Positions 29,601 through 49,930 of a DNA stretch of 64,000 nt are shown here, piece by piece. The position numbers were made by a program, and so were the translations under genes. The notes under the pieces were generated by a model. It saw nothing but the letters and a program-made list of their open reading frames with translations, was not told the origin of the DNA and did not search any database. Position 1 is the first letter of the stretch; each line of letters opens with the position of its first letter. The DNA is from Oopsacas minuta (Eukaryota; Animalia; Porifera): assembly GCA_024704765.1 (NCBI GenBank), contig JAKMXF010000324.1, positions 248,001 to 312,000 on the forward strand. Reading direction: 5' to 3'.

Positions 29601-32600
29601 ACCAACATATCATATAGAGAAATTCCACACAGCAATATTTGTCAACTTGTCAACAATTTTAGTATATCAATCGCTTAGAATATATGCACTGGATACCGTT
29701 ATACCAGTTATAAGAACACCAAATGAAAGAACATACCGGATATAAGTAGCATGGGGAACTGTTCTCAATTTATGTCTTTCATACGTATATAGTTTAAATC
29801 TACTGAACATTACTACGCACACCCTGTAAGCTAGTTAATAGCTCAAAAATGTTATTTTAATTTATTCATACATTCCATATGCTCCATACAATTGCTATGA
29901 CGATAACAGTGACTAAGACAATGGTCTTGTTACACCATTTAGCTGAATGAAACGATTTCTCTATTCATTATGCAGTAATGGCTGAGATGAATAATACAAA
30001 ACTAACTTCTAAACATATTCAATGTATTTCATTTCTATTGAAAGTATGGCATATTCTGAATTCAATCCACTTGTATGCGTAGAGTGCCAACATTTAAAAA
30101 CACCGATTAATATCCTGGAGTGTTTTCATGTCATCTGTCAAGACTGTCATTTCAAGAAAAAAGGCAAATTGTTCTTGATTTCATGTCCATCTTGTTCACA
30201 AATCACAAGTTTACCATTCAAAGAATGTTTGAAGAATCTTTCAGTTTTGATTCTAAAGGAAGTTCTCCCCGAAACTTCTCGTGACAGTATTCCGTCACTT
30301 TTGAAGAATATTGCAATGTTAAGCGAAGAGACAAATGCTAGAGAATTTGAAAAATGCGAGTTAGAGAATCAATATGAATCTCTTAATTCATCATACCAGT
30401 TAAAACTAGAGGATATAAACGCAGAATTTGACAGAAAACTGCGAATTCTCGAGCAGGAAAGAGACACACAAATATTAGACTTAGAGAAAAACAATAAATC
30501 AAAACAGGTTGCATTCACAAAACAAATTGATAATGTAAACAAAACGTTATCAAAAACAATACAAAGAAAACATTTCCTACAAATTTGTTCAGATAGGATG
30601 ACAGAATCTGAGTATAGGACTTATAAATCAATTCTAGACCCTGCACAACCTCGACCACGTATCGCATCTGTAAGTATCAAATCACTGGACCCTGATTCAT
30701 CCAGTGCACCCATTGTTAGCAAAGAGGCACAGTTCACCCAGTCGTTACCAATTTTTAATAAAGATTCCGCAGTATCAAAACCGAAACCAAAGCCTAGATA
30801 TAATAGGAACTTTTCTCTGTGTAAGGAGCCTAGCTTTTCCTTCGGTAGATACGGGATCGGTAGAATGGAATTTAGGGCATTGAAAGCAGTTTGTGTCTCT
30901 CCAGATGATTCATGTGTATTCGTGTTAGACCAGAATCAAGTTAAGGCATTTGATAGCAAAGGCTCTGATCTCTTCCAATTCTCATCATTTCCAGTAAAGC
31001 GATCAATTCCTTTAGAATTATCATCTATAGCAGCTGACGAATATAACGTATACGTCACAAACACTTCCCATGATATTGTATACGTCATGACACTCACATA
31101 CCTTGTGGCAACTGATACTCAGCCTTGTGGAGCAGAGCTTAAAACAACAATTGGGAACACAGGCCCGTTTATACAGAGATTAAGGCTACCAGGGTCAATT
31201 GTGTATAACACATTCAAAAGCCTGCTTTTCATAGCAGATAATGGTAATAAAAGAATTGCGGTATATAACGCAGGGCTCAATTATGTGTGTCAAATAGGAA
31301 AAGGAAATATTGAGCTAGCAGGGAGTCTATGTGTGTCAGTTGATGGAGAGCTAATCTATATACTAGAAAGAGGAAAAATTAGCACAAAATGCGTACGAAT
31401 ATTCAACTACACGGGAGATTTGGTTAAGGAATTTGCTATGCGACATTCTGAATTAAAACATCCATGGTGCTTATGTGTGAGTGACGAAGGGCAAGTTATG
31501 GTATCGGACGGGTCACCGGATTACGGAACATTAGGACACTCCGTGCGTGTGTTTAGTAGAGACGGGAAGCAGATAGGGAAGATTGGGTGTAGTGGAAAAG
31601 GTATGGGACAGTTTAAAGACCCTAGGGGGCTAGTCATTGATAGTAAGGGAAAGATGATTGTAATTGATAGTGGTAATCATCGTCTACAGATATTTTAATA
31701 ATGTATATTTGTAAATGTTTATCGCAGATAGCTAATAAGTCTAATCCTGTATATGGAGTTAAATTTACAAGTAATAGAGTTTGTTGAAGATGTACAAAGT
31801 GTTTCTAAGTGTATATTCGGATAAGCGGCCAGACAGGCTAATATACCACACCCGCTAACATATCATTTTCCTGCTTAACTTTTCCACGAACTTACACATT
31901 ATATTCAGAACGTATATATCAAGTTGACGAATAAGGCTGACGTAATCTATGAACATAACAATTAACAAATAACTCATTGATACTCTCGTATAGTCAGTCT
32001 AATAGCCAGGCCCTTATGATCTGATATAGGCAGTTGCTCTTCATCTCGTGCACTATACAATATTTCTACTGGAGTAACATCTACGTTCAATACGTCAGCT
32101 CCCCCTACAAAACAATGATCGAATGTAGCTCCCTCAGACTTGTATGTTACTTCTAGTGGATTGCTACATAGTTTCAAAGGTTCCATGACGTCACACATAA
32201 ATTTGAATTGGGTCTCGGCGTTTTCGTGTGTTCTCGGGCAAATATTGAAGTCTCCTGTAATAATTATCAATTCGTCCTCATTGAATTGTTTCTTGTAGTC
32301 AGCTATTTCTTGCAATTGAGCCGGTCTCACCCATGGCCTCCAATGCGCGTATAGATGAGTGTTTATCACATGTAAAAGTACAGGTTTTCTCCGTTGTATT
32401 TTTATCTGGACATGCTGAAACCCTTTATAACTACTCTCAAACCATGGGTAACTCGTGAATGCGGTCTCTTGTGTAGATATGATAGGATATCTGCTGAATA
32501 TTATTAATCCGCTATTTCCTCCAAACAAATAAGGCAAAGAATCAGATATATTGTTTATTGAAGAGAATGGCATATAATCTGAAATCAGCTGATAGAAATT

Positions 32601-36628: not shown

Positions 36629-37100
36629 AGGAATGCCAGATTATTTTTCTGTATTTTAAAGTGGGTGTATTTGATTTGTACTTTTCTGGGAAAAGTTAAC
36701 TTGATGGATATGTTTTGATTAATTAGCCCAATTGTTTGCCCCCTTATAATTAATGCATAATATTAATAACATTAATAAACTGTATATTCTAATTCACAAT
36801 AATCTTTGTATTGTAGGGGAGGACTTGGGTTGAATGTAATGGGAGCTTAGGACAATTTTTCAATTTCGGACTTCAATAGAAGCATTTATAACAGGAGGTT
36901 AATTACGTTAATGTCCACTTACACCATTTCGGTGCATATTTGTACAATTCAAGACAAATATCGAAGCCTTAACTTGTACAAATATGCTCCCAAACCCGTC
37001 AAAGTAACCTGTCAGTCATAGGTTATATCTAAGTGATTATCACGGTGCCTTGAGCTTCGGTATTACGGGAGTTTACTTGCTTATTATATTCCATTTAGTT

Positions 37101-38138
37101 ATGAGGTTTACACTGAAAGACATTTGTAAGTATTTCAATGTACCTCACGCAACTTTCGCATTGAGTTTCCTCGCCTTTTCCTTCTTACTTGCTCTTTACT
37201 TAGACGGAATTCTTCAAATAAGTATTTGGGTAGTATTCATACCCTTATGGATTTGGGATATAGCTACTCTGCTGGGTATAATCTTCACTCTAACATTATG
37301 GCATACCAAGTACCATTCTCGTTGTCAGGATGATACAGCTAAGCATTACTTTCATAGCATCCTCCCTAGCATGTTCACAATGTTGCTGCTGATATCTTTT
37401 GAGCTGTTAGTTTGTATAAATCTCAGTCTATCTCTTCCAATATACTTCGTAGTCACGTGTATGCCTTTATTCATCATCTCCATCTTTTCAATATTCTCCA
37501 TTTTATGTACTCTAGGCACCAAACGTGTTTTTGTAGTTTATTATGACATTCATTTGGTGTTGTCATGGTTACAAGTTCTTTTTCTTGGTTTAAGAGTTGA
37601 TACGATTGTAACATGGCACTGGGCGAATACCTTTATACCATCTTGGTTGCTACTTGTAGTCGATATATTCCTTTATATAACTCTAGTGTTAATTATCTAT
37701 AAGATAAGAATTGGTCGGATCGGAGAGCACAGAGCTAAAACACGAATAAAAGTCCAATTTTGGTCATTCACAATTCTATTTCCATTTTTCCATATCTTAA
37801 CAACCGCGTTCTTGATACTATTAGTTATCAAACTTGAGACAGCTGATAATTTGTATTTCTCCATCCTATTTATTCCTCTTTACTTAATTCTACTGCTACT
37901 GATCCTATGTTCCGCAGTTGTTAATAGGAGTAACCCGTTATGGTTTGGATTACGGACATCGTTTTTTGAAGGTTTGATTAAATTCTGTCCGATCTTCCAA
38001 GACCTTGTGAACATCTCATATTCCACTTCAGCTCCAAACGAGGATAGAGAATCGCTACATGTACCAAATAATGGACATAATCAAGATACACATGATCCAG
38101 CTATTGTGCCATATAAGGACATTCTTTCACCAGATTAG
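37101..38138 (+). CDS. TMEM185: TMEM185-like multipass membrane protein, intronless (likely ATG at 37101)
   Basis: LALYLDGILQISIWVVFIPLWIW, a repeated second module LRVDTIVTWHWANTFIPSW, and a C-terminal ...DILSPD. Confidence 0.8.
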   Translation: MRFTLKDICKYFNVPHATFALSFLAFSFLLALYLDGILQISIWVVFIPLWIWDIATLLGIIFTLTLWHTKYHSRCQDDTAKHYFHSILPSMFTMLLLISFELLVCINLSLSLPIYFVVTCMPLFIISIFSIFSILCTLGTKRVFVVYYDIHLVLSWLQVLFLGLRVDTIVTWHWANTFIPSWLLLVVDIFLYITLVLIIYKIRIGRIGEHRAKTRIKVQFWSFTILFPFFHILTTAFLILLVIKLETADNLYFSILFIPLYLILLLLILCSAVVNRSNPLWFGLRTSFFEGLIKFCPIFQDLVNISYSTSAPNEDRESLHVPNNGHNQDTHDPAIVPYKDILSPD

Positions 38139-38231: not shown

Positions 38232-38511
38232 GGGATATAAACATTTGCAATTAAGTTTTTAAGATTTAATAATATTTGTTAATTTTATCAAATTCCTATA
38301 GATTTTCCATAGAAAAATCTAGAATTACAAACTGCACAGAAGTGATTTTAGATTTTTGTTAGAAATATCTCTTTTGTGTAAATTTGATATTCCTTACAGG
38401 TAAGATGGTTATTATATATTAGGCACTATTTGTATGTTTATAGATTTACTCAAACTACAACTTAATATTTGTAGATATTATTCAGAATTATCAAATTCAA
38501 CAGACAAAGAA

Positions 38512-39780
38512 ATGGCTAGCGTAGAAGTGAAAATAAACTTTATCGAACAAGTAAAAGAGAGTAGAAAGAAGATTAGAGACTGCTTCAAGAGGTCACAAGA
38601 AGCTCTACAATTCAGAGAGAGTATCCTCCTCTCTCGTATCGATGAAATCGAGAAAGACTATAATAGCAAAAATCAGGAAATGCAGGAGTTATTGGAAGCT
38701 TTGAATAAATCAAAATCGTTTATTACAGACACTCTGACTTCTAATAAACTTAAAACCACTCATCGAGGAATAGAATCACTAATAAATAAACAGATCGAGG
38801 AACTAACAGTCGACACAGACAGTAGTATTGCATTTGAATGGAACAATCAATTCGAGACTAACATAGAACAGCTAGGGAGTATTCAGCTTAACGGTCAGAC
38901 TAACATATCTCCCAACCACACCTTCCCTGTTCAAGGAAAGCCTGTTGTACCTGACTACAAGGCTAAACAGCTGCCTACTGCTTACTGCTGTAAGAATTCA
39001 GACAAGAAAGCTCCAGGAGAACTGAACTGTCCCAGGGGTATAGCAATACATTACCAAACTGGAAATATTTACATAGCGGATTGTAACAACCATCGTGTAC
39101 AAGTATTTACCAGTAACGGAGACTATCTCTTCATGTTCAGTGAGAAGATGAACAAGCCAATAGGTATCTGTATATTTCAAAATAAAGTGTTTGTTACACA
39201 ATATCTTGGTCATTGCATTAATAAGTACGAGCTAGAAGGGAAACTAATCAAGAGTGTTGGTAGTAGAGGGAATGGAGAAGCTCAGTTCAACGATATATAC
39301 GGTCTAGATGTCTCCGATAGAAATAGCAATGTGTACGTATGTGATTGTAATAATAAAAGAGTTCAAATCTTAACTCAAGAACTCAAGTTCCATTCCATGC
39401 TAGGAATAGACTTGTTTAACCATCCACGTGATGTTAAGGTTACAAGAGACAGAGTATTGGTGCTAGATGACAGTGATCCGTGTATGTTTGTGTTCAATTC
39501 AGATCACGTTCTAACCAACAGACTGATAACTAGAGGTGATGGCAAACAAACTAAAAGTGCATACTGTTTCGACATAGACAGAGACTATAACATCATTTTG
39601 AGTGACTTCGCTAATCACTGTGTGTACATATTCAATCAGGAGGGAGAACAGATACACAAGTTTGGGAAGAAAGGTCAGGGTATCGGGGAGTTCATTAATC
39701 CATATGGAATAGCACTAGACAACACAGGACATATTATAGTTATGTGTCAGAAGAATACTAATTGTCTACAATCCTTCTAA
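38512..39780 (+). CDS. Coiled coil - NHL repeat protein, paralog 1 (likely ATG at 38512)
   Basis: N-terminal coiled coil followed by six NHL blades (PRGIAI...IYIADCNNHRVQVF etc.); no RING or B-box. Confidence 0.9.
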   Translation: MASVEVKINFIEQVKESRKKIRDCFKRSQEALQFRESILLSRIDEIEKDYNSKNQEMQELLEALNKSKSFITDTLTSNKLKTTHRGIESLINKQIEELTVDTDSSIAFEWNNQFETNIEQLGSIQLNGQTNISPNHTFPVQGKPVVPDYKAKQLPTAYCCKNSDKKAPGELNCPRGIAIHYQTGNIYIADCNNHRVQVFTSNGDYLFMFSEKMNKPIGICIFQNKVFVTQYLGHCINKYELEGKLIKSVGSRGNGEAQFNDIYGLDVSDRNSNVYVCDCNNKRVQILTQELKFHSMLGIDLFNHPRDVKVTRDRVLVLDDSDPCMFVFNSDHVLTNRLITRGDGKQTKSAYCFDIDRDYNIILSDFANHCVYIFNQEGEQIHKFGKKGQGIGEFINPYGIALDNTGHIIVMCQKNTNCLQSF

Positions 39781-39980
39781 CTGACTGAAGAATTCTTTAT
39801 AATTTGTACTAATTATTGAAATAGTTTATTGTTTACCATTTTGTTTACTTTATTGATAATGATTATTTCCAGTTTTGTAGAGTTTATCTTATCTAAAGTG
39901 AAAGTTAATTGTGTTAAGGAAAAATGACATAAAAATAGGTTAAGACTTGATAATTATATTTTATTCATTTATAATAAAGC

Positions 39981-40964
39981 ATGGCTACTCAAGTAGAGAC
40001 ACTACATAAAGAACAATTATCATCAGAAGAGAACAAACAAACTGACACCACAGCTGGAGAACAGCTGACTTCTAATCCAACTCATCCACTACAGAATGAA
40101 TGGACTCTATGGTTCTTCCAGCAAGACTCTACCAAAGACTGGGGAGATTGTTTTCAAGAAATTATTTCATTTAATACTATTGAAGGTTTTTGGTCTTGTT
40201 TCAGGTAATATTACGTTCTTTTACTTTTATGCTTAACACTCCTGCCCTATACCAATTTCAAACATCCTGTAGACCCCCTGCTGTCGTTCGTGAACTACCA
40301 AGGGATCCATGGACCCCAGGTTACGAACCGCTAGCTTAGAAATAAGAACGAGTTCATAGATACATTATGTTCCACACACGCACATTTCAAATTTCAGTTT
40401 TTAGATGTAAACTGGGGCAATACATTAATAGTTTTGAGTTATATCTCATTTTCTAATATTTGTAGATTCACGTTAGAGAATTTTGTTGAAACTATTTCTT
40501 TTAAGGTACATAAAGCCTCCAGACCGTCTCCTAACAACTGCAACTATTCCGTATTCAAGAAAGGAATTCGTCCCATGTGGGAAGATCCAGCAAACATGCA
40601 AGGAGGCCGTTGGCTGATACAGATAACTCGGGTTAAGGAAGGTATCGGAAAAGCTTCCACTGCTCATTGGTTTGAGACTCTAATGCTATTGATTGGAGAG
40701 GCATTTATCGACGAACAATCTCCCAAAGATGAGCAGCCACTTTCAAATGATATCTGCGGAGCTGTCATAGAAATTAAACAGAAGAACGACCGTCTTGCCC
40801 TATGGAGCAGAGATTTGAATAAAGCTAGACAAGACCGTATTGGTAAAATCTTAAAGAATACTTTACAAAAACACGCGGGACTCTCCAATTTCGTTTTGTT
40901 CCAATTCTTCTCCCACGCTGACTCTTCTAAAGAAGGCAAATCTAAAGTCATATGTCAAGTTTAG
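39981..40964 (+). CDS. EIF4E: Translation initiation factor 4E (class I-like); exons 39981-40204 and 40466-40964
   Basis: HPLQNEWTLWF, KDW, EGFW, IRPMWEDPANMQGGRW, HWFETLMLLIGE, ICGAV and LALWSR are present. Intron 40205-40465 is phase-consistent. Confidence 0.92.
40268..40333. mobile_element. hAT-like MITE remnants (GGGGTCCACGG/GGACCCC family); relatives at ~790-895, 3085-3175, 26515-26552, 26770-26850, 56270-56340
   Basis: Recurring GC-rich GGACCCC/GGGGTCC motifs with TTTGGGAAC-type ends in otherwise AT-rich DNA. Confidence 0.5.
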
Positions 40965-41130
40965 TTCCTTAATTCACTCATTTCAAACATTATTAGTTCT
41001 CGATAATTCATACAGCAGATTCTTAGTTCGTACTTAGTGCATGTACTGCCATATAAACATGTATAGAGTATTTATCAGTATTCCTATACACAAATTTATT
41101 CTCATAGCTCATATGTATTGAGTATTTATC

Positions 41131-41238
41131 AGGTGTTTGGCGGGCATTATCCCATAAGTTTTTCCAGAGTTGGGGGGATTGAGACCTACATCAGGGGGCG
41201 CGAATATTTCCCCTCAGCGTTTCCCTAGCAAACACCTT
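41131..41238. mobile_element. Small GC-rich element with AGGTGTTTG / CAAACACCT inverted ends upstream of AGO
   Basis: Short TIR pair around ~100 bp of GC-richer sequence. Confidence 0.4.
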
Positions 41239-41407
41239 GGCCAAGGATACTGAATAAGAGTTCATAGGCCAATCCCTTGTGATATAAATATATGTTACTT
41301 TGACGTGTTGGGACCATATTTTACTATTTTGATATAAGTGTGTTCTATATGACGGGAGTTAACTGTTACTTATCTCCATACACTAGACAGTTATATAATT
41401 CTGGATA

Positions 41408-44256
41408 ATGAGCTCATCAAAAGGTGTTACAAAATCAAAAGCACAAAGTGCTAAAGAGAGCAGAGCTACAAAACAGCAAGAAACAGGTGCTTGTAAGAAT
41501 CCTTCTCAGCACGATAAACCCTCTACTAAATCGCCTTCTAAAACAACTGAATATTGTTCGAAGAAATATCCTACAACTTCTCCTAGTGTAAAACACAAAC
41601 CTCAAGGAGGTCCGTATAAAGATATAAAATCTGAACACGGGTATGTCCCTCCCAACAGACCAAGTTATGCTACTCTAGGTAGTTCTCTTACAGTGATTAT
41701 AAATTTCTTCCCAATTAAAATACCAAACATAACTATACACCAGTATGACGTCACAATATTCGATTCATCCACTGGTGGTGAAAATGACGAAAAAACCGAG
41801 GAACAAACAGCTGAGTACAGACGTACTGTTAGCAACAAATACGTGTGTAGAAATGTAATAAATGTGTTATCTAATACGCAATTAAAGAGCGAATACCCAG
41901 CTTATGATGGTCGATCTATTCTCTATCTAAAAGATCGTATAGATGTACGCAGATACACTGTAGAATGGAAAGATGAGGAAGATGGTAAGAGAGTTAGACA
42001 GCATGAAGTTGTGCTAAAACACACTGCACACATTGATCTATCTGTTATAACAGGATTAACTCAACGGGAACATCAGTTTGATTCAATGACTAATCATGAT
42101 GAATTCCTAAGTCGCCATCAGGTTGCTACGAATGCGGTAGATACTATCTTCAAACAATTCGCAGCTGCCAGATATACCCCATCGGGTAGAGGTTTTTACT
42201 GGTATTGTAAGGGTCGAGACTTTGATTTGGGTTCAGAACTTGAACTTTGGAAAGGATTTACACAATCTGCGAGGCCTGGTCAGAAACAGGCGTATTTGAA
42301 TATTAACATGTCATATCGTCCATGTATTAAACCGTGGTATCTACTTGACTACCTCTGGGAAGTTTTATATTATCTCAAAGATTTCGAAGAATTATGTAAT
42401 GAAGCTATACTGGAAGATGCTGCTAAGGAAATATTCTATCTAGAATTGTATACTGACCATCTAGGGCATAAACGTAAGTATAAGGTAAAACGAGATAAGG
42501 TTTTCCTTCAACCTGCAAATAAAGAGACATTCCTATGCGATGGAAAGGTAGTTACGGTGCAAAAATATTTCAAAAATCATTATAAAAAGGAGCTAAAATA
42601 CCCCGATCTTCCCTGTATCGATGTCGGAAGAGGCGATAAGGTAATCGCGTTACCAATGGAGATCTGTTATATAAAAGAAGGTCAAAGGTCAAATAATGAA
42701 ATGACCTCTAAACAGAAGCGTAAAATGGTTGAAACGACTTCTGTGCCTCCTATTAACAGACAAGATGATATCAAATCTATAGCAATTGAAATGTTACCTC
42801 CTGATGATCCGTTACGAAATTACTACAAAATCGAAACCAGTAACGCTATGGTCAAGGCGGAGTGTCGCCAGTTACCACCTCCAGTGATAAACTATAACAA
42901 AAATACTTCTCTCAAACCAAACTATGGAAAGTGGCAATTAGGCGGTTATAAATTGGTTGAACCTATTCCAGTATATTTATGGGCTATCCTACACTTCAGT
43001 AATTTCAGTAAAGAAGATGGGTACGTCCGTTATAATGCATTTATTAATCAAATGCAGAGGCAAGCTGGCGATAAAGGCATTCATATGGAAAGGCCAGTAA
43101 ATGAGAAAATATTAACAGAAGTAATTTAAGGAAAGGTTTAGATGAAATTAATACATTGATACGGGATACTTGTGATAAACACGGGAGAGAGCTACAGCTA
43201 ATACTATGTATCATAGACCGTGAGCTAAAAGGCAAATCATTTAACAGTGGTGATATCTACAATAATATTAAGCTAATAGGAGATTCTAAGCTTAACATAG
43301 TTACTCAATGTATTGACCAGAAAAATGCTATAGCAATGAATGGCTCAACTTTAGGCGGAATATGTTTGAAAATTAACGCTAAACTTGGTGGGATAAATCA
43401 CTACGCGACGGTACACACCACTGACCCTCTTCTAATTGATACAATGATCTTGGGAGCTGATGTCAATCATCCCAAGCCAGGGCCTACGATGTATGATTCC
43501 CCTTCAATTGCAGTCGCATGTGTTGCATTAGACAGAGAAATATCACGGTATTACAGTACTTGTCGCTTTCAGAAGAATATATACAATGCAAAACAAAGAC
43601 AGGAGATTATAGTCGAATTTGAGAGTATGTGTGATGAACTATTAAATGAATACGAAAAGTTTAATAACGAATTGCCTAAGAAAATTCTATTTTACAGAGA
43701 CGGAGTGTCAGAAAGTCAATTTCAATTCTGTCTTAACCATGAATTACCAGCAATAAAGCGTGCTTGTATGAAATTTGCCAAAGATTTCAACCCTAAAATT
43801 ACGCTAGTTTGTGTACAGAAGCGACACCATATGAGAATGTTTGAAATACAAAAGGAGAATACTATCAAAAATGTAAATCCCGGTACATATCTTGATCACA
43901 CTATAACACATCCATACGAGTATGATTTCTATCTGTGTAGCCACGCGGCCATGAAAGGTACTGCAAGAGCTGCGCACTATCATGTTCTCCATGATGAGAT
44001 TAAATACACCCCTAATCAGCTGTTTACCATAACTAATCAGCTGTGTTATTGCTACTCAAGATGCACTAAGTCAGTTTCAATTCCTCCTCCAGTATATTAT
44101 GCAGATCTAATAGCTTACAGATATATGAATTGTTTTGACGCTTATAGAGGTAAAAGGAACATTGTACAGAATCAAGATCCTGATAAAATAGACTGGGATC
44201 TTTATCGTAAGAAAGTTAATATTGAAATGCTGCCCGGAAAGATGTTCTGGGCATAA
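41408..44256 (+). CDS. AGO: Argonaute (AGO clade), intronless CDS with one -1 frameshift at A-run 43106-43109
   Basis: N domain (RPSYATLG...NFF...HQYDV), L1 (LELWKGFTQSARP), PAZ (LKYPDLPCI...LPMEIC), MID (YNNIKLIGD...TQC, KINAKLGG) and PIWI (LGADVNHP, RQEII, FYRDGVSE, QKRHH, DFYLCSH, RCTKSVSIPPPVYYAD). Confidence 0.95.
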
Positions 44257-44635
44257 CAACCAGTATGTAGGTTAGTTATTTACTCTCAGTAGTTTATAGA
44301 TATTAGTAGGATTTACAGTTAGGAAGTGCTCGTTCCTTATAAAGGTAGTTATAAGCTAGGTTAGAGGATGTATATTTCCCAACTTGTACTTTCAATAATT
44401 ATTTATTGTAGGTTTCTTGTGTGTGTTTAGATATGATATATTATTGTGTGATATCATATTGTTATGGGTACGGGGTGATAGAATTGTGTTAAGGGATTAA
44501 AGAACTATTATTTATATTGCTTTTTAGAGGAATTTGAAGTATTAGAGTCTGTTAATTCAGTGTATTTTACTGATACAGAGATTCTATCAGTTCCATAGCC
44601 ATTGAAATTTACAAGCACAATTCTCATCTACTAAC

Positions 44636-44772
44636 TACAGTCAACTCCCATTAGACCGAAGCTTAAAGGGATAATTACTTCGATATGACCCATGAATATA
44701 TGTTGCTTTGACGGTTTGGGAGTACATTTGTCGATATACGCGGGTATTTCGGTATAACAGGAGTTGACTGTA
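44636..44772. mobile_element. MITE family A copy upstream of the UEV gene
   Basis: TACAGTCAACTCC ... GGAGTTGACTGTA, perfect 13-bp ends including TA. Confidence 0.8.
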
Positions 44773-44840
44773 AAATAATTCGAATAATGTAAGTCATCTA
44801 AACGTCTTTTGTGTAATACTAGTTATATAGAAAATTAGAA

Positions 44841-45881
44841 ATGAGTGGATCTGGAAAAGAAAGTAATGACGCGATATCATCTTGCCGTAAGAAACTAATC
44901 GATCTACACTATACTAACCCAGAATCAGTTTTAGAACAAGCAATTCAACTCATGGGGTGGTATAAAACGTTAGAACTGAAATCAGCTGTTGTAAAGAGAA
45001 ACGGCAACAGTGATGAACTTATAAAATTATACGGAGAAATTCCAATCTCCCAAAATGGTAGTCATTTGAATATACACGGATTCATAACGATTTGGATTGA
45101 GAAAAACTTTCCTATCTCAGCGCCGATAATAAAACTTAATCAAACGAATTTTCCTGATATTTTCTTTGAACCTTTCCTCAACAGGAAGCAATGTATTGTA
45201 ATATACTCGCCATACTTTGAATGGAACCAGTCAAAGTCAACGCTTATAGATTTGATCCAATTAGTCTGTGTGAATTTAAGACAAGTTTGTATGGGTTGGG
45301 TATTGTCCGCTAGGGACCAAGAAGATCCCAACTGGTCCATACCCCCTCGACTCTCAATGCCAGGAGGTTTCCAACCGTTTCCCCCTATGACTAATCAAAA
45401 TAACAATCCATTAGAGACATCGCCAATTGGTGCAAGACACCCTTACATGAATCCTGGTCCAATGGGTGCTAATATGGTACCACAAAATCGTCCCCCTATG
45501 CTCCCTAATCCTCCTCTCCCAATGAGATACCCTAATCATTTTCAACAGCCTATGTTCCCAATACTCCGACAGACATCTGGAGATTTCATTAATTATACTG
45601 GTGTTGGTCCAAATCAATTTCCAAGGCAATTTCCTAATAATTATAATCAACCTTATCCCCAACCGCTGCAACCGCCGCCGCATCCATCCTACTCTCCTCA
45701 AAAAATCGCCCCAGTAGCTCCCCCAGTCCAACAGCCAGTTGAAGAACCTCTGAACGGTCTCTCCTCTCCGAATTCTCCTAGCAAAGACCCTGTAATTTCC
45801 TCTCCGCCCCTTCCCGTCATATCTTCACCCCCCGCGGTCCCAGCTTTCGCCAGAAAAGTGCCCGCAACTAAAACCACCTAA
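44841..45881 (+). CDS. TSG101/Vps23-like UEV domain plus proline-rich tail; no coiled coil or steadiness box seen
   Basis: ELIKLYGEIPI...ITIWIEKNFPISAPII...YFEWNQSKSTLIDLIQLV resembles the TSG101 UEV domain; the remainder is Pro/Gln/Asn-rich up to the stop. Confidence 0.7.
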   Translation: MSGSGKESNDAISSCRKKLIDLHYTNPESVLEQAIQLMGWYKTLELKSAVVKRNGNSDELIKLYGEIPISQNGSHLNIHGFITIWIEKNFPISAPIIKLNQTNFPDIFFEPFLNRKQCIVIYSPYFEWNQSKSTLIDLIQLVCVNLRQVCMGWVLSARDQEDPNWSIPPRLSMPGGFQPFPPMTNQNNNPLETSPIGARHPYMNPGPMGANMVPQNRPPMLPNPPLPMRYPNHFQQPMFPILRQTSGDFINYTGVGPNQFPRQFPNNYNQPYPQPLQPPPHPSYSPQKIAPVAPPVQQPVEEPLNGLSSPNSPSKDPVISSPPLPVISSPPAVPAFARKVPATKTT

Positions 45882-46728
45882 ATACCATGACAATGTCTTT
45901 AATGAACAATGTATTGAATGATAATAACGTTCATCAATCACTGCAAGAGTTTCATCCAATTTATGTGTGTACTTACTTAATTCATTTATATGTTGTGTTA
46001 GATTTCTATACATGTTTATACAGATATGATCCAGTTTGAATGGGAGCTTAATTTATCTTATAATCACTCTCAGAGTATATTTTATTATTATAATATTGTT
46101 TACTGTCTTAGGTGAACAGATAAACTTTATGTTCGCAACGGGGACGAAGAGTGAAGCTATACAAAACTCCTGACTCACAAAACTTATAACTCGGATGAGA
46201 CGTAATTCGGTTAATGTGTACTATTTTGTTTCCCAAGGGAGTACGTCTTATCTGAGTTTACTGTATTATTTATCCTGAAGGTTTTTGTCATATTTGCATA
46301 TTCCCGCAATTTTCATGACTTTTCCGATCTATTTTTACAGTTTTCTAACAAATGTACGAATATTGAAAATTCGGCAGAAATATGTAAATTTTTGGGACAA
46401 GTTAAGTCTATTTGAATAGATTTTACTGAGCAAAATTACTACAGTGATTCATAACGAAATGAACACTACCGCAGGGGGGGTAGATATCGTAATAGCCATA
46501 CAAACTAGCTAAATTCAACCGATCTTTGCGACTATGCCATGGTCTGTAATGGTTTAGTAACACTGAGTAATCATATCGTCATAACTTACTTACACATTAG
46601 CTCTAAAAGAATATTGAAAGTAATTATTAGTAATATTATTAGGCCAAACCTGAATTACTTTAAATAGGGTAACTTAAGACAAAATAGTAATTAAAGTTTG
46701 AAAATACTCACAAACGTAAATTCATCGA

Positions 46729-47994
46729 ATGGCTACTATACAGAAACCTAATTTTATCGAACAAGTAAAAGAGAGTAGAAAGAAGATTAGAGACTGCTTC
46801 AAGAGGTCGCATGAAGCTCTACAACTCAGAGAGAGTATCCTCCTCTCTCATATTGATCAAATCGAGAAAGATTATAATATCAAAAATCAGGAAGTGAATA
46901 CATTGCTAGAGACTTTGAATAAAGAAATAACACACACCGCAGAGACATTCTCCGCAAATAAACTCACTGACGTTCATCAAATAATTCAATCGACTATTAA
47001 CAAGAAGATAACAGAACTAACAGCTGATACAGACAGTAGTATTGAGTTTGAATGGAACAATCAATTCGAGACTGACATAGAACAGCTAGGGAGTATTAAG
47101 CTTAACAGTCAGACTAACATATCTCCCACCCGCACCTTCCCTCCTCAAGTGAAGCCTGTTGTACCTGACTACAAGGCTAAACAGCTGCCTACTGCTTACT
47201 GCTGTAAGAATTCAGGCAAGAAAGCTCCAGGAGAACTGAGCGGTCCCAGATGTATAGCAGTACATTACCAAACTGGAAACATTTACATAGCGGATTGTAG
47301 CAACGATCGTGTACAAGTATTTAGCTGTAACGGTGACTATCTCTTCATGTTCAGTGAGAAGATGAACCGACCAGTAGGTATCTGTATAACTCAGAATAAA
47401 GTGTTTGTTACACAATGGCATGGTCATTACATTAATAAGTACGAACTAGAAGGGAAACTAATCAAGAGTGTTGGTAGTTATGGGAATGGAGAAGCTCAAT
47501 TCCACGGTCCACACGGTCTAGATGTCTCTGATAGAAATAGCAATGTGTATGTATGTGATTCTTATAATAACAGAGTTCAAATCTTAACTGAAGAACTCAA
47601 GTTCCATTCCATACTAGGAATAGACTTGTTTGAGTATCCATGTGTCGTTAAGGTTACAAGAGACAGAGTATTGGTGCTAGATAAGAGTGATCCGTGTATG
47701 TTTGTGTTCAATTCAGATCACGTTCTAACCAACAGACTGATAACTAGAGGTGATGGCGAACAAATAAACAATCCATATTGTTTCGACATAGACAGAGACT
47801 ATAACATCATTATGAGTGATAACAGTAATCACTGTGTATACGTATTCAATCAGGAGGGAGAACAGATACACAAGTTTGGGAAGCAAGGTCAGGGTATCGG
47901 GGAGTTCTATTATCCCTGGGGAATAGCATTAGACAACACAGGACATATTATAGTTGTGTGTCAGAAGGATACTAATTGTCTACAATTCTTCTAA
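46729..47994 (+). CDS. Coiled coil - NHL repeat protein, paralog 2
   Basis: Colinear with 38512-39780 from NFIEQVKESRKK to the stop codon; six NHL blades. Confidence 0.9.
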   Translation: MATIQKPNFIEQVKESRKKIRDCFKRSHEALQLRESILLSHIDQIEKDYNIKNQEVNTLLETLNKEITHTAETFSANKLTDVHQIIQSTINKKITELTADTDSSIEFEWNNQFETDIEQLGSIKLNSQTNISPTRTFPPQVKPVVPDYKAKQLPTAYCCKNSGKKAPGELSGPRCIAVHYQTGNIYIADCSNDRVQVFSCNGDYLFMFSEKMNRPVGICITQNKVFVTQWHGHYINKYELEGKLIKSVGSYGNGEAQFHGPHGLDVSDRNSNVYVCDSYNNRVQILTEELKFHSILGIDLFEYPCVVKVTRDRVLVLDKSDPCMFVFNSDHVLTNRLITRGDGEQINNPYCFDIDRDYNIIMSDNSNHCVYVFNQEGEQIHKFGKQGQGIGEFYYPWGIALDNTGHIIVVCQKDTNCLQFF

Positions 47995-48184
47995 CTGACT
48001 TTAGTATTTAGAATTTGTGATTGCTATGAAGGCTATGATACTTTAGTTCCCTTTATTCATATTGCTTGATATTGCGTATTAGCTAAATATTTGTATTTCC
48101 AATTGTTACTTTAATACACAACAATTTTAGGCTATTATTTGCCCAAAAAGCACAAACTCTCTCTCTCTATATTTTTAATAGTGT

Positions 48185-49930
48185 ATGGGTCAAGATAATT
48201 CTACACAACAAAATCCAATCACCACTCCTGACAACCACACAATCCTGAATAACTCACAATGGCATAGCTACACACAAACTAAATCAAATCTCACAAACAA
48301 ACCTGGAACAATTTTCACACACAAATACACTTCGCCACAATCCTGGCAAGAAACTATTAATTATCTAAAATATATAAGAACATTACGTCATCCAAATATA
48401 CTCAAATACTCCTCATCTTATACAATACCAAATGACCGTATTGAGCTAATAATATCCCCTACCATATCTCTCACACAATTCATCCCTCACTGCTCAAAGT
48501 CAAATACAATTCAGGGTATACGTGAGCTTGTATCGGCTATATTATTCTTACATGATTCAGCTAAAGTCTGTCATCTGGGTATTTCTGTTGGAGAAGTATT
48601 TATCGATAATTTTAATGGTTGTTGGCTTTTGGGAGGATTTGGATTAGCTCGTAAAATAGTGTCCACTGTGAATAATGAGATATTATCATTGGAAAAATTC
48701 AATTTATTGAAGAAGCAGTTAAACGAAGACGAAGCAGAACTTACGAATTGTACAAGTATTGATGTGTGGTTGTTTAAGCAGTTTATTGATGACGTCATTG
48801 AAGCGACAAAGTACAATTCATTGCTAGAAGATTTGCTCGATTGGTTAGATACAAATTGGTTTGAATTGCAATTTGAGGATATTTTAAATCACGAAACTCT
48901 GAATAATTCCGTAACAGAAACAATTGAAATGTTGACGAATATTTCTATAATGGATCGACATGCGAAAAGGAAATTTCTAGAATCGCTACCCTCGCGATTA
49001 AACACACTTGACGAATCTGTTTTGGCGTTCAGAATAACTCAGCTAATATTTTCAACACATTTGTACATGGAACAACTTGTCAGGAATAATATTATCCCAT
49101 TATTGCTAATCCCAAAATGTAAAAAGTTCTCAAAGGAAATATCAGGAAATCAGGAATATATCCTGAATGCTCTTATCACAGAGGACACATACAAACAATT
49201 CATAGTTCCGCTTATCATACGATTATTCGCTAAACAAGAATTACAATTGAGAGTAATTCTATTAAAATACTTCAAATATTTTATTTATTTATTTTCATAT
49301 CAACAACAAACATTGATACATTCACATATAATTTTGGGGCTGAGAGATTCTAGAGAGGAATTGGCTAAACTCACATTTTTCGCTTTAGGAGAGTTGACGA
49401 GTTATATGGGAGTACGGGGCGTCACTGGCAAAGAGGTGCGTCCCATTTTCACAGACGTACGACCAAGAGATTATCAATTAACAGTGTCAAATAATGACGT
49501 AATCGATAATAATATTAATCACATGGATGTTATGCAGCCAATTGAACAAAATTCTGCGAATACAGCAAATGTACAAATATCTTGCGAAAACGAGTTATCA
49601 GATTTTTTTGAAAATGAGACAAAACAACAGGAAAATATTGAATGTTATAATATTGAAAACCTGAATGAAGCTGATTTACTCTCTGAATTAAGGAAACCAA
49701 AATTCCATCTCGGGAAGAGAGAGAACAACTTCCCTGAACCTGAAACGGACGAATTATTATTAGTTACAGACGACTCTCATAAACAAACCCTCCTCGAATT
49801 AAGTCAATTGAATTCTCTTCCAAATAATCCTATTGAGAATGGAATAGACAATCTAACAGATATAGAGTTAGATTCTAATACAGATAATGGCAAACCTGAA
49901 ATAGCATGGGAAGATTGGGATCCCTTTTGA
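48185..49930 (+). CDS. SCYL3: SCY1-like pseudokinase 3 (PACE-1)-like, intronless
   Basis: MG start (possible myristoylation), RTLRHPNILKY, a degenerate kinase domain, HEAT-like region LRVILLKYF...LGLRD and an acidic tail. Confidence 0.8.
   Translation: MGQDNSTQQNPITTPDNHTILNNSQWHSYTQTKSNLTNKPGTIFTHKYTSPQSWQETINYLKYIRTLRHPNILKYSSSYTIPNDRIELIISPTISLTQFIPHCSKSNTIQGIRELVSAILFLHDSAKVCHLGISVGEVFIDNFNGCWLLGGFGLARKIVSTVNNEILSLEKFNLLKKQLNEDEAELTNCTSIDVWLFKQFIDDVIEATKYNSLLEDLLDWLDTNWFELQFEDILNHETLNNSVTETIEMLTNISIMDRHAKRKFLESLPSRLNTLDESVLAFRITQLIFSTHLYMEQLVRNNIIPLLLIPKCKKFSKEISGNQEYILNALITEDTYKQFIVPLIIRLFAKQELQLRVILLKYFKYFIYLFSYQQQTLIHSHIILGLRDSREELAKLTFFALGELTSYMGVRGVTGKEVRPIFTDVRPRDYQLTVSNNDVIDNNINHMDVMQPIEQNSANTANVQISCENELSDFFENETKQQENIECYNIENLNEADLLSELRKPKFHLGKRENNFPEPETDELLLVTDDSHKQTLLELSQLNSLPNNPIENGIDNLTDIELDSNTDNGKPEIAWEDWDPF

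What the first reader, a model, noticed from the sequence alone, without database searches (positions are those of the whole stretch)
38512..47994. NHL paralog pair with hypervariable propeller loops: candidate diversified receptor family
Seen: I aligned the two NHL domains by hand (KAPGEL to stop, about 257 aa). There are 45 amino-acid differences but only about 13 silent-only codon changes, and identical DNA runs of about 70 nt lie between the variable patches. About 32 of the 45 changes fall in the two loop motifs repeated in each blade: LNCPRG/LSGPRC, DCNNH/DCSND, QYLGHC/QWHGHY, FNDIYG/FHGPHG, DCNNK/DSYNN, FNHPRD/FEYPCV, QTKSAY/QINNPY, DFAN/DNSN, FINPYG/FYYPWG. Many are multi-base and radical. 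Established: these loops form the top face of the NHL beta-propeller, which is the RNA-binding surface in Brat and LIN-41/TRIM71. Inference: strong diversifying selection on a ligand-binding surface with a conserved scaffold, as in immune receptor families. This would fit a repertoire of pathogen- or RNA-motif-specific sensors in an early-branching animal.
Basis: partly seen in the sequence, partly recalled or inferred. Interest (0 to 1): 0.82.

Follow-up and report, generated by a model that had tools for sequence, protein, structure and literature searches.

The report
Hypervariable NHL propeller family, glass sponge
Two genes in this glass-sponge window belong to a large, apparently undescribed family of intracellular NHL-propeller proteins that stay almost identical, even at silent DNA sites, except for about 35 fast-changing residues on one face, the pattern expected of a diversified recognition repertoire.

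Summary
Genes A (38512-39780) and B (46729-47994) are intronless coiled-coil + six-blade NHL proteins of Oopsacas minuta. Their NHL parts differ at 45 residues and only 13 silent-only codons, with 32 of the 45 on one propeller face.

They are not a simple pair. They belong to a family of dozens of copies per genome, with hundreds across glass-sponge assemblies. In 117 paralogs about 35 positions are hypervariable. All lie in the D-A and B-C loops of the six blades, on the top face. Everything else is nearly invariant.

- In A's young duplication subfamily, hypervariable-site dN is 0.52-0.72 against 0.09-0.10 in flanks and N-terminal silent sites.
- My approximate M1a/M2a test gives 2ΔlnL≈312, and 19 of 20 selected sites are on the top face.

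Two complications are new:
- Paralogs are recombinant mosaics.
- The linker and NHL scaffold are conserved at synonymous sites between species whose neighbouring genes are saturated. This is unexplained, and it makes local dS a poor neutral ruler.

The ligand and any immune role are untested. The scan had already found this family on another piece of this genome (s1-284890).

The parts
38332..39945 (+). DNA-level duplication unit of gene A (about 180 nt 5' flank + CDS + about 165 nt 3' flank)
   Evidence: blastn: this unit is 90-91% identical to four copies on O. minuta contig JAKMXF010000319 (loci L001, L002), and a fifth copy there matches from 38474 on. One copy (L002 3803-5797) extends to window 40324, and a fragment of the neighbouring eIF4E gene (window 40361-40629) lies at L002 7708-7976.
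38512..39780 (+). Gene A, intronless CDS, 422 aa (coiled coil + linker + NHL propeller)
   Evidence: ORF; Pfam NHL at 74.5 bits; positional orthologues lie upstream of eIF4E in other glass-sponge assemblies (L009 1786-3057, L010 1661-2926, end of L011).
38512..38847 (+). Codons 1-112: helical hairpin (coiled coil), with no RING or B-box
   Evidence: AlphaFold helices 4-73 and 78-102, pLDDT 68-84. No Pfam hit. Silent divergence here behaves neutrally: 0.015-1.06 between paralogs, and pS 0.66 against the orthologue.
38848..39006 (+). Codons 113-165: predicted disordered linker that is ultra-conserved at DNA level
   Evidence: pLDDT <50. Between species only about 4% of same-amino-acid codons differ in codons 121-160; pS is 0.09-0.16 against 0.67-0.78 in neighbouring genes.
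39007..39777 (+). Codons 166-422: six-bladed NHL propeller of gene A with 12 hypervariable loop patches
   Evidence: pLDDT >90; Foldseek TRIM71/Thin/LIN-41/TRIM2/Brat, E 3e-21, TM 0.84-0.86. Hypervariable codons in window coordinates: 39028-39039, 39082-39093, 39154-39162, 39202-39210, 39265-39267, 39289-39300, 39346-39357, 39418-39429, 39469-39474, 39553-39567, 39607-39615, 39694-39705, 39748-39756 (entropy map; a codon p starts at 38512+3(p-1)).
46729..47994 (+). Gene B, intronless CDS, 421 aa, same architecture (NHL part 47221-47991)
   Evidence: ORF; Pfam NHL at 77.9 bits. Homology to every paralog is confined to the CDS (46750-48022). No gene lies at this position (the UEV-SCYL spacer) in two other glass sponges. 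Hypervariable codons sit at A numbering minus 1, so a codon p starts at 46729+3(p-2).
39962..45881 (+). Context, not part of the family: eIF4E, Argonaute and UEV/TSG101-like genes lying between A and B
   Evidence: Pfam. The same order and strand (NHL-eIF4E-AGO-UEV-SCYL) is found in L009 and L010, and eIF4E-AGO-UEV-SCYL in L011.
30022..31698 (+). Context: distant relative, a 558-aa ORF with a RING-like Cys/His N-terminus, a coiled coil and NHL repeats
   Evidence: tblastn 22-30% identity to A; ORF translation. It is not a member of the hypervariable family.

Best explanation
A and B are two members of a glass-sponge (Hexactinellida) multigene family. The proteins are intronless and have no evident signal peptide, so they are presumably cytosolic. 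Each has an N-terminal helical coiled coil, a conserved linker and a six-bladed NHL beta-propeller. The propeller is of the TRIM2/3/71 type, but the proteins lack a RING and a B-box.

The propeller is a fixed scaffold. Two to four residues in each D-A loop and each B-C loop of all six blades, about 35 in all, ring the central groove of the top face and differ from copy to copy. Almost every paralog therefore carries a unique surface.

These positions are driven apart by diversifying selection acting on point changes and on exchanges between paralogs. The rest of the protein is under very strong purifying selection.

Inferred mechanism: coiled-coil dimers present two variable top faces that each bind a different ligand, either nucleic acid or protein. 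The invariant linker and scaffold would couple binding to a common downstream partner. Together the family would form a germline-encoded intracellular recognition repertoire.

Shown: the architecture, the location of the variable sites, the rates and the family size. Inferred: ligand binding, dimerisation, and an immune or non-self role.
For: - **Family size.** 665 database proteins match at E<=1e-5. The best 120 are 414-459 aa and 69-83% identical; 23 of them are annotated O. minuta proteins and the rest come from other assemblies.
- **Where the variation sits.** The entropy map of 117 paralogs is near zero everywhere in the NHL except at about 35 positions. The same positions vary in O. minuta and in the other sponges. 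There are 115 distinct hypervariable haplotypes in 117 proteins.
- **Structure.** The AlphaFold propeller has pLDDT >90. Every hypervariable site lies in a D-A or B-C loop or at the first residues of strand A. Twenty of 21 cross-defined sites are on the top face and none on the bottom (p=2e-6).
- **Residue-level anchor.** Reading the printed TRIM2 alignment by hand, N594 and D640 align to position 320 and to position 365, next to 366-368. PMC9634614 places both residues at the central groove of the top surface.
- **Fold.** TRIM71, Thin, LIN-41, TRIM2/3 and Brat.
- **Rates in loop classes defined in advance.** B-C loops give dN/dS 1.5 in O. minuta and 1.19 in the other sponges; for A against B they show 14 replacement and 0 silent changes. 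A-B loops give 0.2.
- **Cross-validated sites.** Sites defined in one species and tested in the other have dN 0.69-0.73 against scaffold dS 0.14-0.17.
- **Neutral yardstick free of local dS.** In the six-copy A subfamily, flanks diverge by 0.094 and N-terminal silent sites by 0.10. Hypervariable dN is 0.52 for 35 sites and 0.72 for the 21 independently defined sites. Fisher p=8e-10 for A against L002_3982.
- **Site models.** M1a lnL -5527.3 against M2a -5371.0 (2dlnL about 312), with omega2 about 6 in about 9% of sites. Twenty sites have P>0.95, and 19 of them are on the top face.
- **Not neutral drift.** Hypervariable codons vary more at positions 1 and 2 than at position 3 (0.92, 0.91 and 0.62 bits). 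Asn, His, Cys, Tyr, Gly, Trp and Arg are enriched; Pro, Ile, Thr, Ala, Leu and Val are depleted.
- **Functional genes.** The scaffold's pN is only about 0.06 and most copies keep intact ORFs.
- **Transcription.** An RNA-like run holds contigs of the family, including one with a B-type leader and start codon.
Against: - No ligand, binding test or challenge experiment exists.
- Local dS is not neutral: the scaffold's silent sites are constrained. dN/dS values computed within the NHL, including my M2a test, therefore overstate omega.
- The paralogs recombine (PHI p=0.001; N-terminal and NHL histories are uncorrelated). This violates the single-tree assumption of the site models. It also means part of the excess divergence in young duplicates may be imported by conversion rather than newly selected.
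- At the longer distance between species X and Y, hypervariable pN (0.37) does not exceed neutral pS (0.41-0.50). The sites are saturated there.
- Positional orthologues share no more hypervariable residues (11 of 35) than random cross-species pairs do. No stable per-locus specificity is visible.
- The proteins lack a RING and a B-box, so any effector mechanism is unknown.
- Face assignment rests on a predicted model and two mapped TRIM2 residues, not on a solved structure.
- My codon-model code is an approximation: fixed topology, grid of omega values, 20 sequences.
Confidence: 0.7

Rival explanations
1. Relaxed constraint only. The 35 positions are simply unconstrained surface residues drifting at the neutral rate in an otherwise extremely constrained protein. 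The apparent dN>dS is an artefact of abnormally low local dS.
For: Scaffold synonymous sites are constrained 3-5 fold. For A against B, hypervariable dN (0.70) is about equal to N-terminal dS (0.80). Between species X and Y, hypervariable pN 0.37 is not above neutral pS 0.41-0.50.
Against: In young duplicates, flanks and N-terminal silent sites differ by 3-10%, yet the hypervariable sites are already near saturation: 21-28 of 35 residues differ, dN 0.52-0.72, Fisher p=8e-10. Codon positions 1 and 2 vary more than position 3. The residue and codon composition is far from the mutational expectation: two thirds of hypervariable codons are NRY, Pro is 0.01 of expectation and Thr 0.22.
Confidence: 0.08
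2. Recombination mosaic without selection for novelty. Frequent short-tract gene conversion among many paralogs reshuffles an old pool of loop variants. Young duplicates then look divergent at the loops without new adaptive substitutions.
For: PHI test p=0.001. N-terminal and NHL divergences are uncorrelated; for example dS is 0.015 against 0.15 for L002_3982 and L001_10001. Scaffold pS sits on a plateau of 0.09-0.17 for all pairs whatever their age. Ten of the 13 silent sites that vary in both species share the same two codons.
Against: Unselected conversion homogenises rather than maintains 115 distinct haplotypes in 117 genes. Linkage between variable NHL sites is near zero even 1-5 residues apart (r2 0.03-0.05), which is hard to obtain from tract-wise exchange alone. 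The variation is confined to one face with a biased residue set, so it still needs selection. Most likely this process is a component of the main explanation, not an alternative to it.
Confidence: 0.1
3. Programmed diversification. The family is the substrate of an active, possibly somatic, templated mechanism such as cassette-like gene conversion or targeted mutagenesis of the loop codons. The nucleotide-level identity of the scaffold is itself maintained for that mechanism.
For: Synonymous conservation of codons 113-422 across species with saturated neighbours. It is not explained by RNA structure (z=+1.78), codon bias (GC3 0.38 against 0.37) or a long overlapping ORF. Hypervariable codons are largely NRY, which cannot become stop codons by changes at positions 1 or 2. 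Truncated and frameshifted copies exist that could act as donors.
Against: There is no direct evidence for somatic variants. The reads available were contigs only and cannot show rare variants. No candidate enzyme was identified. All the variation seen is germline-encoded between loci.
Confidence: 0.08

Closest known systems
TRIM-NHL proteins (TRIM2, TRIM3, TRIM71/LIN-41, Thin/TRIM32, Brat, Mei-P26)
   Same: Six-bladed NHL propeller, with the best sequence and fold matches (TRIM2 E 2.5e-38; TRIM71 and Thin TM 0.84-0.86). A coiled coil precedes the NHL. In those proteins the ligand site is the central groove of the top face (PMC9634614; the RNA complexes 4ZLR, 6FQ3 and 8J72 are listed).
   Different: No RING, B-box or filamin domain. 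Intronless. Dozens of copies per genome instead of a few conserved single genes. The top face is hypervariable between copies rather than conserved and basic.
finTRIM / TRIM5alpha-type antiviral TRIMs (B30.2 domain)
   Same: TRIM-derived intracellular proteins expanded into a large multigene family, with positive selection concentrated in the loops of the C-terminal recognition domain (PMC2657112, listed).
   Different: The recognition domain there is B30.2/SPRY, not NHL. Those proteins keep the RING and B-box (E3 ligase function). Antiviral function has been shown for some of them; none is shown here.
Podospora NWD / HET-D / HET-E WD40-propeller NLRs
   Same: A beta-propeller recognition domain with a few positions per blade under diversifying selection on the interaction surface, exchange between family members, and action in the cytoplasm of a syncytial organism (PMC1805685).
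   Different: Those propellers are WD40 with nearly identical repeats inside one protein. Here the blades are only about 20% identical to each other. Those proteins carry NACHT and effector domains, which are absent here. The fungal family has about 10 members.
Diversity-generating retroelement targets (resemblance in codon design only)
   Same: Variable codons are embedded in an invariant nucleotide scaffold and biased to NNY codons, especially AAY. Such codons cannot mutate to stop at positions 1 or 2 (the DGR side is from my own knowledge).
   Different: No template repeat or reverse transcriptase was identified. I did not scan the window for a reverse transcriptase. The second codon position is restricted to purines here. 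The system is eukaryotic and multi-locus. This is not a DGR.

Membership tests
NHL-repeat six-bladed beta-propeller (Pfam PF01436) | NHL repeat profile match above the curated cut-off | tested here: met
   74.5 bits (A) and 77.9 bits (B) against a cut-off of 20.
NHL-repeat six-bladed beta-propeller (Pfam PF01436) | Six four-stranded blades; fold superposes on solved NHL domains | tested here: met
   The AlphaFold model has 22 strands of three or more residues in residues 174-413 plus a short C-terminal bridge, laid out as six blades, with pLDDT >90. Foldseek gives 8J72, 6XG7, 6FQ3, 7QRX and 1Q7F at E 3e-21 to 2e-15.
TRIM-NHL (RBCC-NHL, class VII TRIM) | N-terminal RING finger | tested here: not met
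   No RING hit. The coiled-coil helix starts at residue 4. The upstream gene ends at 38138 and annotated family members are 414-423 aa.
TRIM-NHL (RBCC-NHL, class VII TRIM) | One or two B-boxes | tested here: not met
   No B-box hit in Pfam at E<=0.01.
TRIM-NHL (RBCC-NHL, class VII TRIM) | Coiled coil followed by a C-terminal NHL domain most similar to TRIM2/3/71 | tested here: met
   Helices 4-73 and 78-102. The best PDB sequence hits are the TRIM2, TRIM3, Thin and TRIM71 NHL domains.
Diversified innate recognition receptor families (functional class, e.g. finTRIM/TRIM5) | Lineage-specific multigene expansion with birth and death of copies | tested here: met
   At least 25 full-length O. minuta copies and hundreds in other glass-sponge assemblies. 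Truncated, frameshifted and stop-containing copies also exist.
Diversified innate recognition receptor families (functional class, e.g. finTRIM/TRIM5) | Sites evolving faster than neutral, clustered on the ligand-binding surface | tested here: met
   The flank-calibrated excess is 5-7 fold. M2a is preferred over M1a with 2dlnL about 312, and 19 of 20 selected sites are on the top face. Caveats: recombination and non-neutral local dS.
Diversified innate recognition receptor families (functional class, e.g. finTRIM/TRIM5) | Binds non-self ligands, or is induced or required on challenge | not testable with these tools
   Only contig-level read data were available. No functional data were found in the searched literature.
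Fungal NWD/HET-E-type propeller NLRs with highly conserved internal repeats | NACHT/NB-ARC nucleotide-binding domain | tested here: not met
   No such Pfam hit.
Fungal NWD/HET-E-type propeller NLRs with highly conserved internal repeats | Near-identical repeats within one protein | tested here: not met
   Blade-to-blade identity within protein A is 13-31%, mean 20%.
Fungal NWD/HET-E-type propeller NLRs with highly conserved internal repeats | Hypervariable positions on the propeller's interaction face, plus exchange between family members | tested here: met
   This is a resemblance in mode of evolution, not membership.

The most novel reading that the evidence does not exclude
Glass sponges are syncytial animals. 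They may maintain an actively diversified cytoplasmic recognition system built on NHL propellers. More than 100 near-identical scaffolds would be kept identical even at silent sites because that identity is needed for frequent, possibly somatic, short-tract exchange or targeted mutagenesis of the NRY-coded loop codons. The result would be a self/non-self or antiviral repertoire analogous to fungal heterokaryon-incompatibility propeller receptors. On this reading the unexplained cross-species synonymous conservation is the footprint of that mechanism.
Probability: 0.1. Interest if true: 0.95.

Novelty: new variant of a known kind. Interest (0 to 1): 0.8.

Why it matters
Large germline-encoded receptor families with a hypervariable binding face are central to innate immunity and allorecognition. 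Known examples include TRIM5/finTRIM, NLR leucine-rich repeats and fungal HET propellers. No such family built on the NHL propeller has been described in the literature I could search, and none for glass sponges. Their immunity and self-recognition are almost unknown, and their tissue is a syncytium.

The family gives a directly testable candidate: about 35 defined positions on a well-predicted fold, with natural variants ready for binding screens.

The second result may matter as much. A 930-nt coding scaffold stays nearly unchanged at silent sites between species whose neighbouring genes are saturated, while embedded codons turn over at or above the neutral rate. That combination is not explained by gene conversion, RNA structure, codon bias or overlapping genes. 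It points either to an unknown nucleotide-level constraint or to a diversification mechanism.

Tried and rejected
- **Pairwise dN/dS over the whole NHL.** It gives 0.84 for A against B and 0.55-0.65 across the family, not above 1. It only becomes informative per structural class.
- **Local dS as a neutral ruler.** Rejected after the cross-species calibration.
- **Gene conversion alone as the cause of low scaffold dS.** Rejected. Conversion cannot lower divergence between species, and the N-terminus of the same gene is saturated.
- **Ancient paralog lineages sorted between species.** N-terminal and NHL trees both group sequences by species.
- **RNA secondary structure as the silent-site constraint.** z=+1.78 for codons 113-422 and 0.15 for codons 1-112. 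There is no Rfam match.
- **Codon bias.** GC3 is 0.38 against 0.37.
- **A long overlapping ORF.** The longest alternative-frame open stretches are 30-120 codons and are not consistent between copies.
- **Retroposition of A.** Rejected, because flanks are co-duplicated. For B the homology is CDS-only, so its mode of origin stays open.
- **Stable specificity of positional orthologues.** Not seen: 11 of 35 hypervariable residues are shared, the same as for random pairs.
- **Decay of linkage with distance inside the NHL.** None detectable, because r2 is already at background.
- **Shared housekeeping genes in the first eight loci for calibration.** None found. Solved by fetching the syntenic block.
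- **Reads.** Only contigs were available, so per-gene expression, allelic polymorphism and somatic variation could not be assessed.
- **Residue-level superposition on the RNA complexes.** Not possible, because no model coordinates were available. Replaced by loop topology plus two mapped TRIM2 residues.

Full report
**What is in the window.** Two intronless ORFs on the + strand encode 422- and 421-aa proteins that are 79% identical: A at 38512-39780 and B at 46729-47994.
- Pfam finds NHL repeats and the DUF5128 six-bladed propeller in both, and nothing else. In particular there is no RING or B-box.
From KAPGEL to the stop there are 257 codons, 45 amino-acid differences and 13 silent-only codons; 13 of the replacements are multi-base.
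- Identical DNA runs of 56, 63, 72 and 41 nt separate the variable patches.

**Organism and family.** The best database hits are annotated proteins of the glass sponge Oopsacas minuta (LOD99 locus tags, assembly GCA_024704765.1).
- 665 proteins match at E<=1e-5. The best 120 are 414-459 aa long and 69-83% identical to A.
- Twenty-three of those are O. minuta proteins. The rest come from ENA assemblies of other sponges.
- SCYL orthologues show that these assemblies represent several species, 50-63% identical to O. minuta in that housekeeping protein.
- The automatic product names, such as PEP-CTERM, PknD, PKD-domain and cell-surface protein, are misleading.
- Copies are scattered singly or in loose clusters among unrelated housekeeping genes.
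- Some copies are truncated, frameshifted or carry a premature stop.
- Neither the O. minuta nor the Aphrocallistes genome paper mentions NHL or TRIM proteins. Four further full-text searches found no description of this family.
- The scan itself had already flagged the family on another piece of this genome (s1-284890).

**Structure and position of the variable sites.** An AlphaFold model built on 97 paralogs has three parts:
- a helical hairpin (helices 4-73 and 78-102);
- a low-confidence linker (113-163);
- a six-bladed propeller (about 170-420) with pLDDT above 90.

Foldseek and HMMER place the propeller with the TRIM71/LIN-41, Thin, TRIM2/3 and Brat NHL domains (E down to 3e-21, TM 0.84-0.86; TRIM2 sequence E 2.5e-38).

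In an alignment of 117 paralogs the per-column entropy is near zero through almost the whole NHL domain. It exceeds 2 bits at discrete positions, and these are the same in O. minuta and in the other sponges. In A numbering they are: 173/175/176, 191/192/194, 215/217, 231-233, 252/260/261/263, 279/280/282, 303/304/306, 320/321, 348/349/351/352, 366-368, 395/396/398 and 413/415.

Every one lies in a D-A loop, a B-C loop or the first residues of strand A. All are therefore on one face. The A-B and C-D loops on the other face are conserved.
- With faces defined symmetrically from the model's strands, 20 of 21 sites defined in the other species are top-face and none is bottom-face (p=2e-6).
- Reading the printed TRIM2 alignment by hand, N594 and D640 align with position 320 and with position 365, next to 366-368. 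PMC9634614 places both at the central groove of the top surface.
- I could not superpose the model on the RNA complexes, so correspondence with RNA-contact residues of Brat or LIN-41 is not shown.

**Tests of diversifying evolution.**
- (a) Structural classes fixed in advance. B-C loops have dN/dS 1.5 in 12 O. minuta copies and 1.19 in 6 copies from other sponges. A against B shows 14 replacement and 0 silent changes there. A-B loops give 0.2, and the bottom face 0.34.
- (b) Cross-validation. Sites chosen from the protein entropy of the other species have dN 0.73 in O. minuta, against dS 0.17 in the rest of the NHL. The reverse test gives 0.69 against 0.14.
- (c) A yardstick independent of local dS. 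Gene A belongs to a young DNA-level duplication subfamily whose unit (38332-39945) includes about 180 nt of 5' and 165 nt of 3' flank.
  - Across its six copies the flanks differ by 0.094 and N-terminal silent sites by 0.10.
  - The 35 hypervariable sites have dN 0.52, and the 21 independently defined sites 0.72.
  - Twenty-one to 28 of 35 residues differ in most pairs.
  - Fisher p=8e-10 for A against its closest flank-sharing copy.
- (d) My own approximate codon likelihood uses a fixed IQ-TREE topology, 20 CDS, codons 166-422, an omega grid and an optimised branch scale.
  - M0 omega is 0.77. M1a lnL is -5527.3 and M2a lnL is -5371.0, so 2dlnL is about 312.
  - omega2 is about 6 in about 9% of sites.
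  - Twenty sites have P>0.95: 173, 191, 192, 215, 217, 231, 232, 260, 261, 263, 280, 304, 306, 320, 351, 366, 367, 396, 398 and 413. Nineteen are on the top face.
- (e) The sites do not look neutral.
  - Codon positions 1 and 2 are more variable than position 3 (0.92, 0.91 and 0.62 bits).
  - Asn, His, Cys, Tyr, Gly, Trp and Arg are 1.4-2.9 fold over the mutational expectation. Pro, Ile, Thr, Ala, Leu and Val are strongly depleted.
  - The codons are largely NRY. The second position is a purine in 83% and the third a pyrimidine in 77%. NRY makes up 66% of codons against 27% elsewhere.
  - Ser is AGY rather than TCN at 53:15, against 253:227 elsewhere. Arg is CGN rather than AGR at 35:21, against 91:212 elsewhere.
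  - The Ser and Arg codon choice shows a codon-level effect, not only an amino-acid-level one. Counts over paralogs are not independent, so those p-values are indicative only.

**Complications that change the reading.**

First, the genes are mosaics.
- Silent divergence in codons 1-112 ranges from 0.015 to 1.06 between O. minuta paralogs and is tree-like.
- In codons 113-422 it sits on a plateau of about 0.10-0.28 for every pair and is uncorrelated with the N-terminal value.
- A against B is 0.80 and 0.10 respectively.
- PHI tests indicate recombination (p=0.001). Linkage between variable NHL sites is at background even for neighbouring residues.

Second, and unexpectedly, the scaffold is conserved at silent sites between species.
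- A syntenic block NHL-eIF4E-Argonaute-UEV-SCYL exists in at least two other glass-sponge assemblies (L009, L010). A third contig (L011) holds eIF4E-Argonaute-UEV-SCYL and ends inside the NHL gene.
- Between O. minuta and species X the neighbours are saturated (pS 0.67-0.78; 57-71% of four-fold sites differ). So are codons 1-112 of the NHL gene (pS 0.66).
- Codons 113-165 have pS 0.12 and codons 166-422 have pS 0.23.
- Between the closer species X and Y the neighbours have dS 0.54-0.82. The N-terminus has pS 0.42, the linker 0.087 and the non-hypervariable NHL 0.143.
- Of 112 amino-acid-invariant degenerate codons in 113-422, 64 never vary in 19 sequences, with only 4 fixed differences. Ten of the 13 codons that vary in both groups use the same two codons.
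- Gene conversion within a species cannot produce this. Any two copies in different species share an ancestor older than the split.
- I found no support for RNA structure (z=+1.78), an Rfam family, codon bias or a consistent overlapping ORF.
- This remains unexplained. Test (c) is the one that stands on neutral ground.
- At the X-Y distance the hypervariable sites are saturated (pN 0.37). Positional orthologues share 11 of 35 residues, no more than random cross-species pairs. Specificities evidently turn over completely, or are exchanged, on that time scale.

**History of the two genes.**
- A occupies the ancestral position upstream of eIF4E. The cluster on contig JAKMXF010000319 was seeded from this locus, because one copy there carries a fragment of eIF4E.
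- B lies in the UEV-SCYL spacer, which is empty (about 570-650 bp) in the other sponges. It is an O. minuta-lineage insertion, or was lost in the others.
- B's homology to all paralogs ends at the CDS.
- Copies sit next to many unrelated genes, so the two NHL genes bracketing Argonaute is probably coincidental. The A-eIF4E-Argonaute linkage itself is old.

**Reads.**
- Four runs of one sample hold the region, as contigs only.
- Three behave like DNA. One behaves like RNA: the eIF4E intron is skipped and intergenic depth is near zero.
- The RNA-like run contains contigs on the family, including one with a B-type leader and start codon. At least some members are therefore transcribed.
- Per-gene expression, alleles and somatic variants cannot be resolved from contigs.

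**Most likely mechanism.**
- Shown: a rigid NHL propeller whose top-face groove is lined by about 35 positions that differ in nearly every copy and change faster than neutral, on a scaffold under extreme constraint.
- Inferred: coiled-coil dimers display two such faces, each paralog binds a different ligand, and the invariant linker and scaffold engage a shared partner. Without a RING, any ubiquitin-ligase output would need another protein.
- The residue set (Tyr, Asn, His, Ser, Gly, Arg, Cys, Trp) resembles generic binding interfaces more than a purely basic RNA-binding face. Protein, nucleic-acid or other ligands all remain open.
- Diversity is generated by point changes within NRY codon space together with exchange between paralogs, and is retained by selection.

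**Comparison with known systems and novelty.**
- By fold and sequence, this is an NHL domain of the TRIM2/3/71 type. By architecture it fails the TRIM definition, having no RING or B-box.
- In mode of evolution it resembles finTRIM/TRIM5 (PMC2657112) and especially the Podospora NWD/HET-D/E WD40 propellers (PMC1805685). It lacks their NACHT domain and their internally near-identical repeats; here blades are about 20% identical.
- I rate it a new variant of a known kind: a diversified recognition family on a new scaffold, in a phylum where none is described.
- It also carries an unexplained nucleotide-level conservation that could hide something more unusual.

Noticed in passing
window 43105-43106 (Argonaute, ORFs 41408-43129 and 43156-44256): All four read sets carry one extra base here: G after 43106 in X1-X3 and A after 43105 in X4. 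This puts the two Argonaute ORFs in one frame. The orthologues in three other glass sponges are single ORFs of 901-908 aa. The 'frameshift' in the MID region therefore looks like an assembly indel or a strain polymorphism, not a broken gene.
   Followed up: partly
window 40529 (eIF4E): All four runs have an extra C after 40529 relative to the window. This is probably another single-base assembly error inside eIF4E. An eIF4E intron (40198-40498, GT start) is skipped in the RNA-like run X3.
   Followed up: no
window 38512-49930; L009 1786-11725; L010 1661-11734; L011 1-8090: The block NHL-eIF4E-Argonaute-UEV-SCYL, followed by mit_SMPDase and GST, is conserved in order and strand in L009 and L010. 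L011 holds eIF4E-Argonaute-UEV-SCYL and ends 129 nt inside the NHL gene. The silent sites of these genes are saturated against O. minuta.
   Followed up: yes
window 30022-31698 (+): A 558-aa ORF with a RING-like Cys/His N-terminus, a coiled coil and NHL repeats, 22-30% identical to A. It is a more canonical TRIM-like NHL gene 7 kb upstream and a possible relative of the family's ancestor.
   Followed up: partly
L002 6273-7441, 9427-9750, 7708-7976; L008 3687-5777: NHL copies on O. minuta contig JAKMXF010000319 lie next to FLYWCH/MULE and HTH transposase-like genes and to a stray 270-nt fragment of eIF4E copied from the window's locus. In another sponge, DUF4371 and HTH_32 genes flank a frameshifted NHL copy. 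Transposon-rich surroundings may be involved in spreading the family.
   Followed up: no
L004 17532-18800 (-), L004 4700-5599, L008 6992-8259, L007 2-597, L005 1-1059, L003 1-729: Defective or partial family members. One has a stop at codon 77, one is 5'-truncated and two are frameshifted. Two more are cut by the end of the locus or contig and so may not be defective. This fits birth-and-death turnover, or possible donor copies.
   Followed up: partly
window 38872-38991 (codons 121-160 of gene A) and the same codons in all paralogs: The predicted disordered linker, with a conserved Pro/Lys/Tyr-rich stretch ending in a Cys-Cys pair, is the most conserved part at DNA level. About 4% of same-amino-acid codons differ between species, and it has the highest GC3 (0.45). 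No known motif or RNA family matched.
   Followed up: partly
window 36958-37077, 23245-23356 and 56670-56787: A roughly 120-nt sequence inside or near the TMEM185-like gene recurs twice elsewhere in the window at 75% identity. I did not examine it.
   Followed up: no
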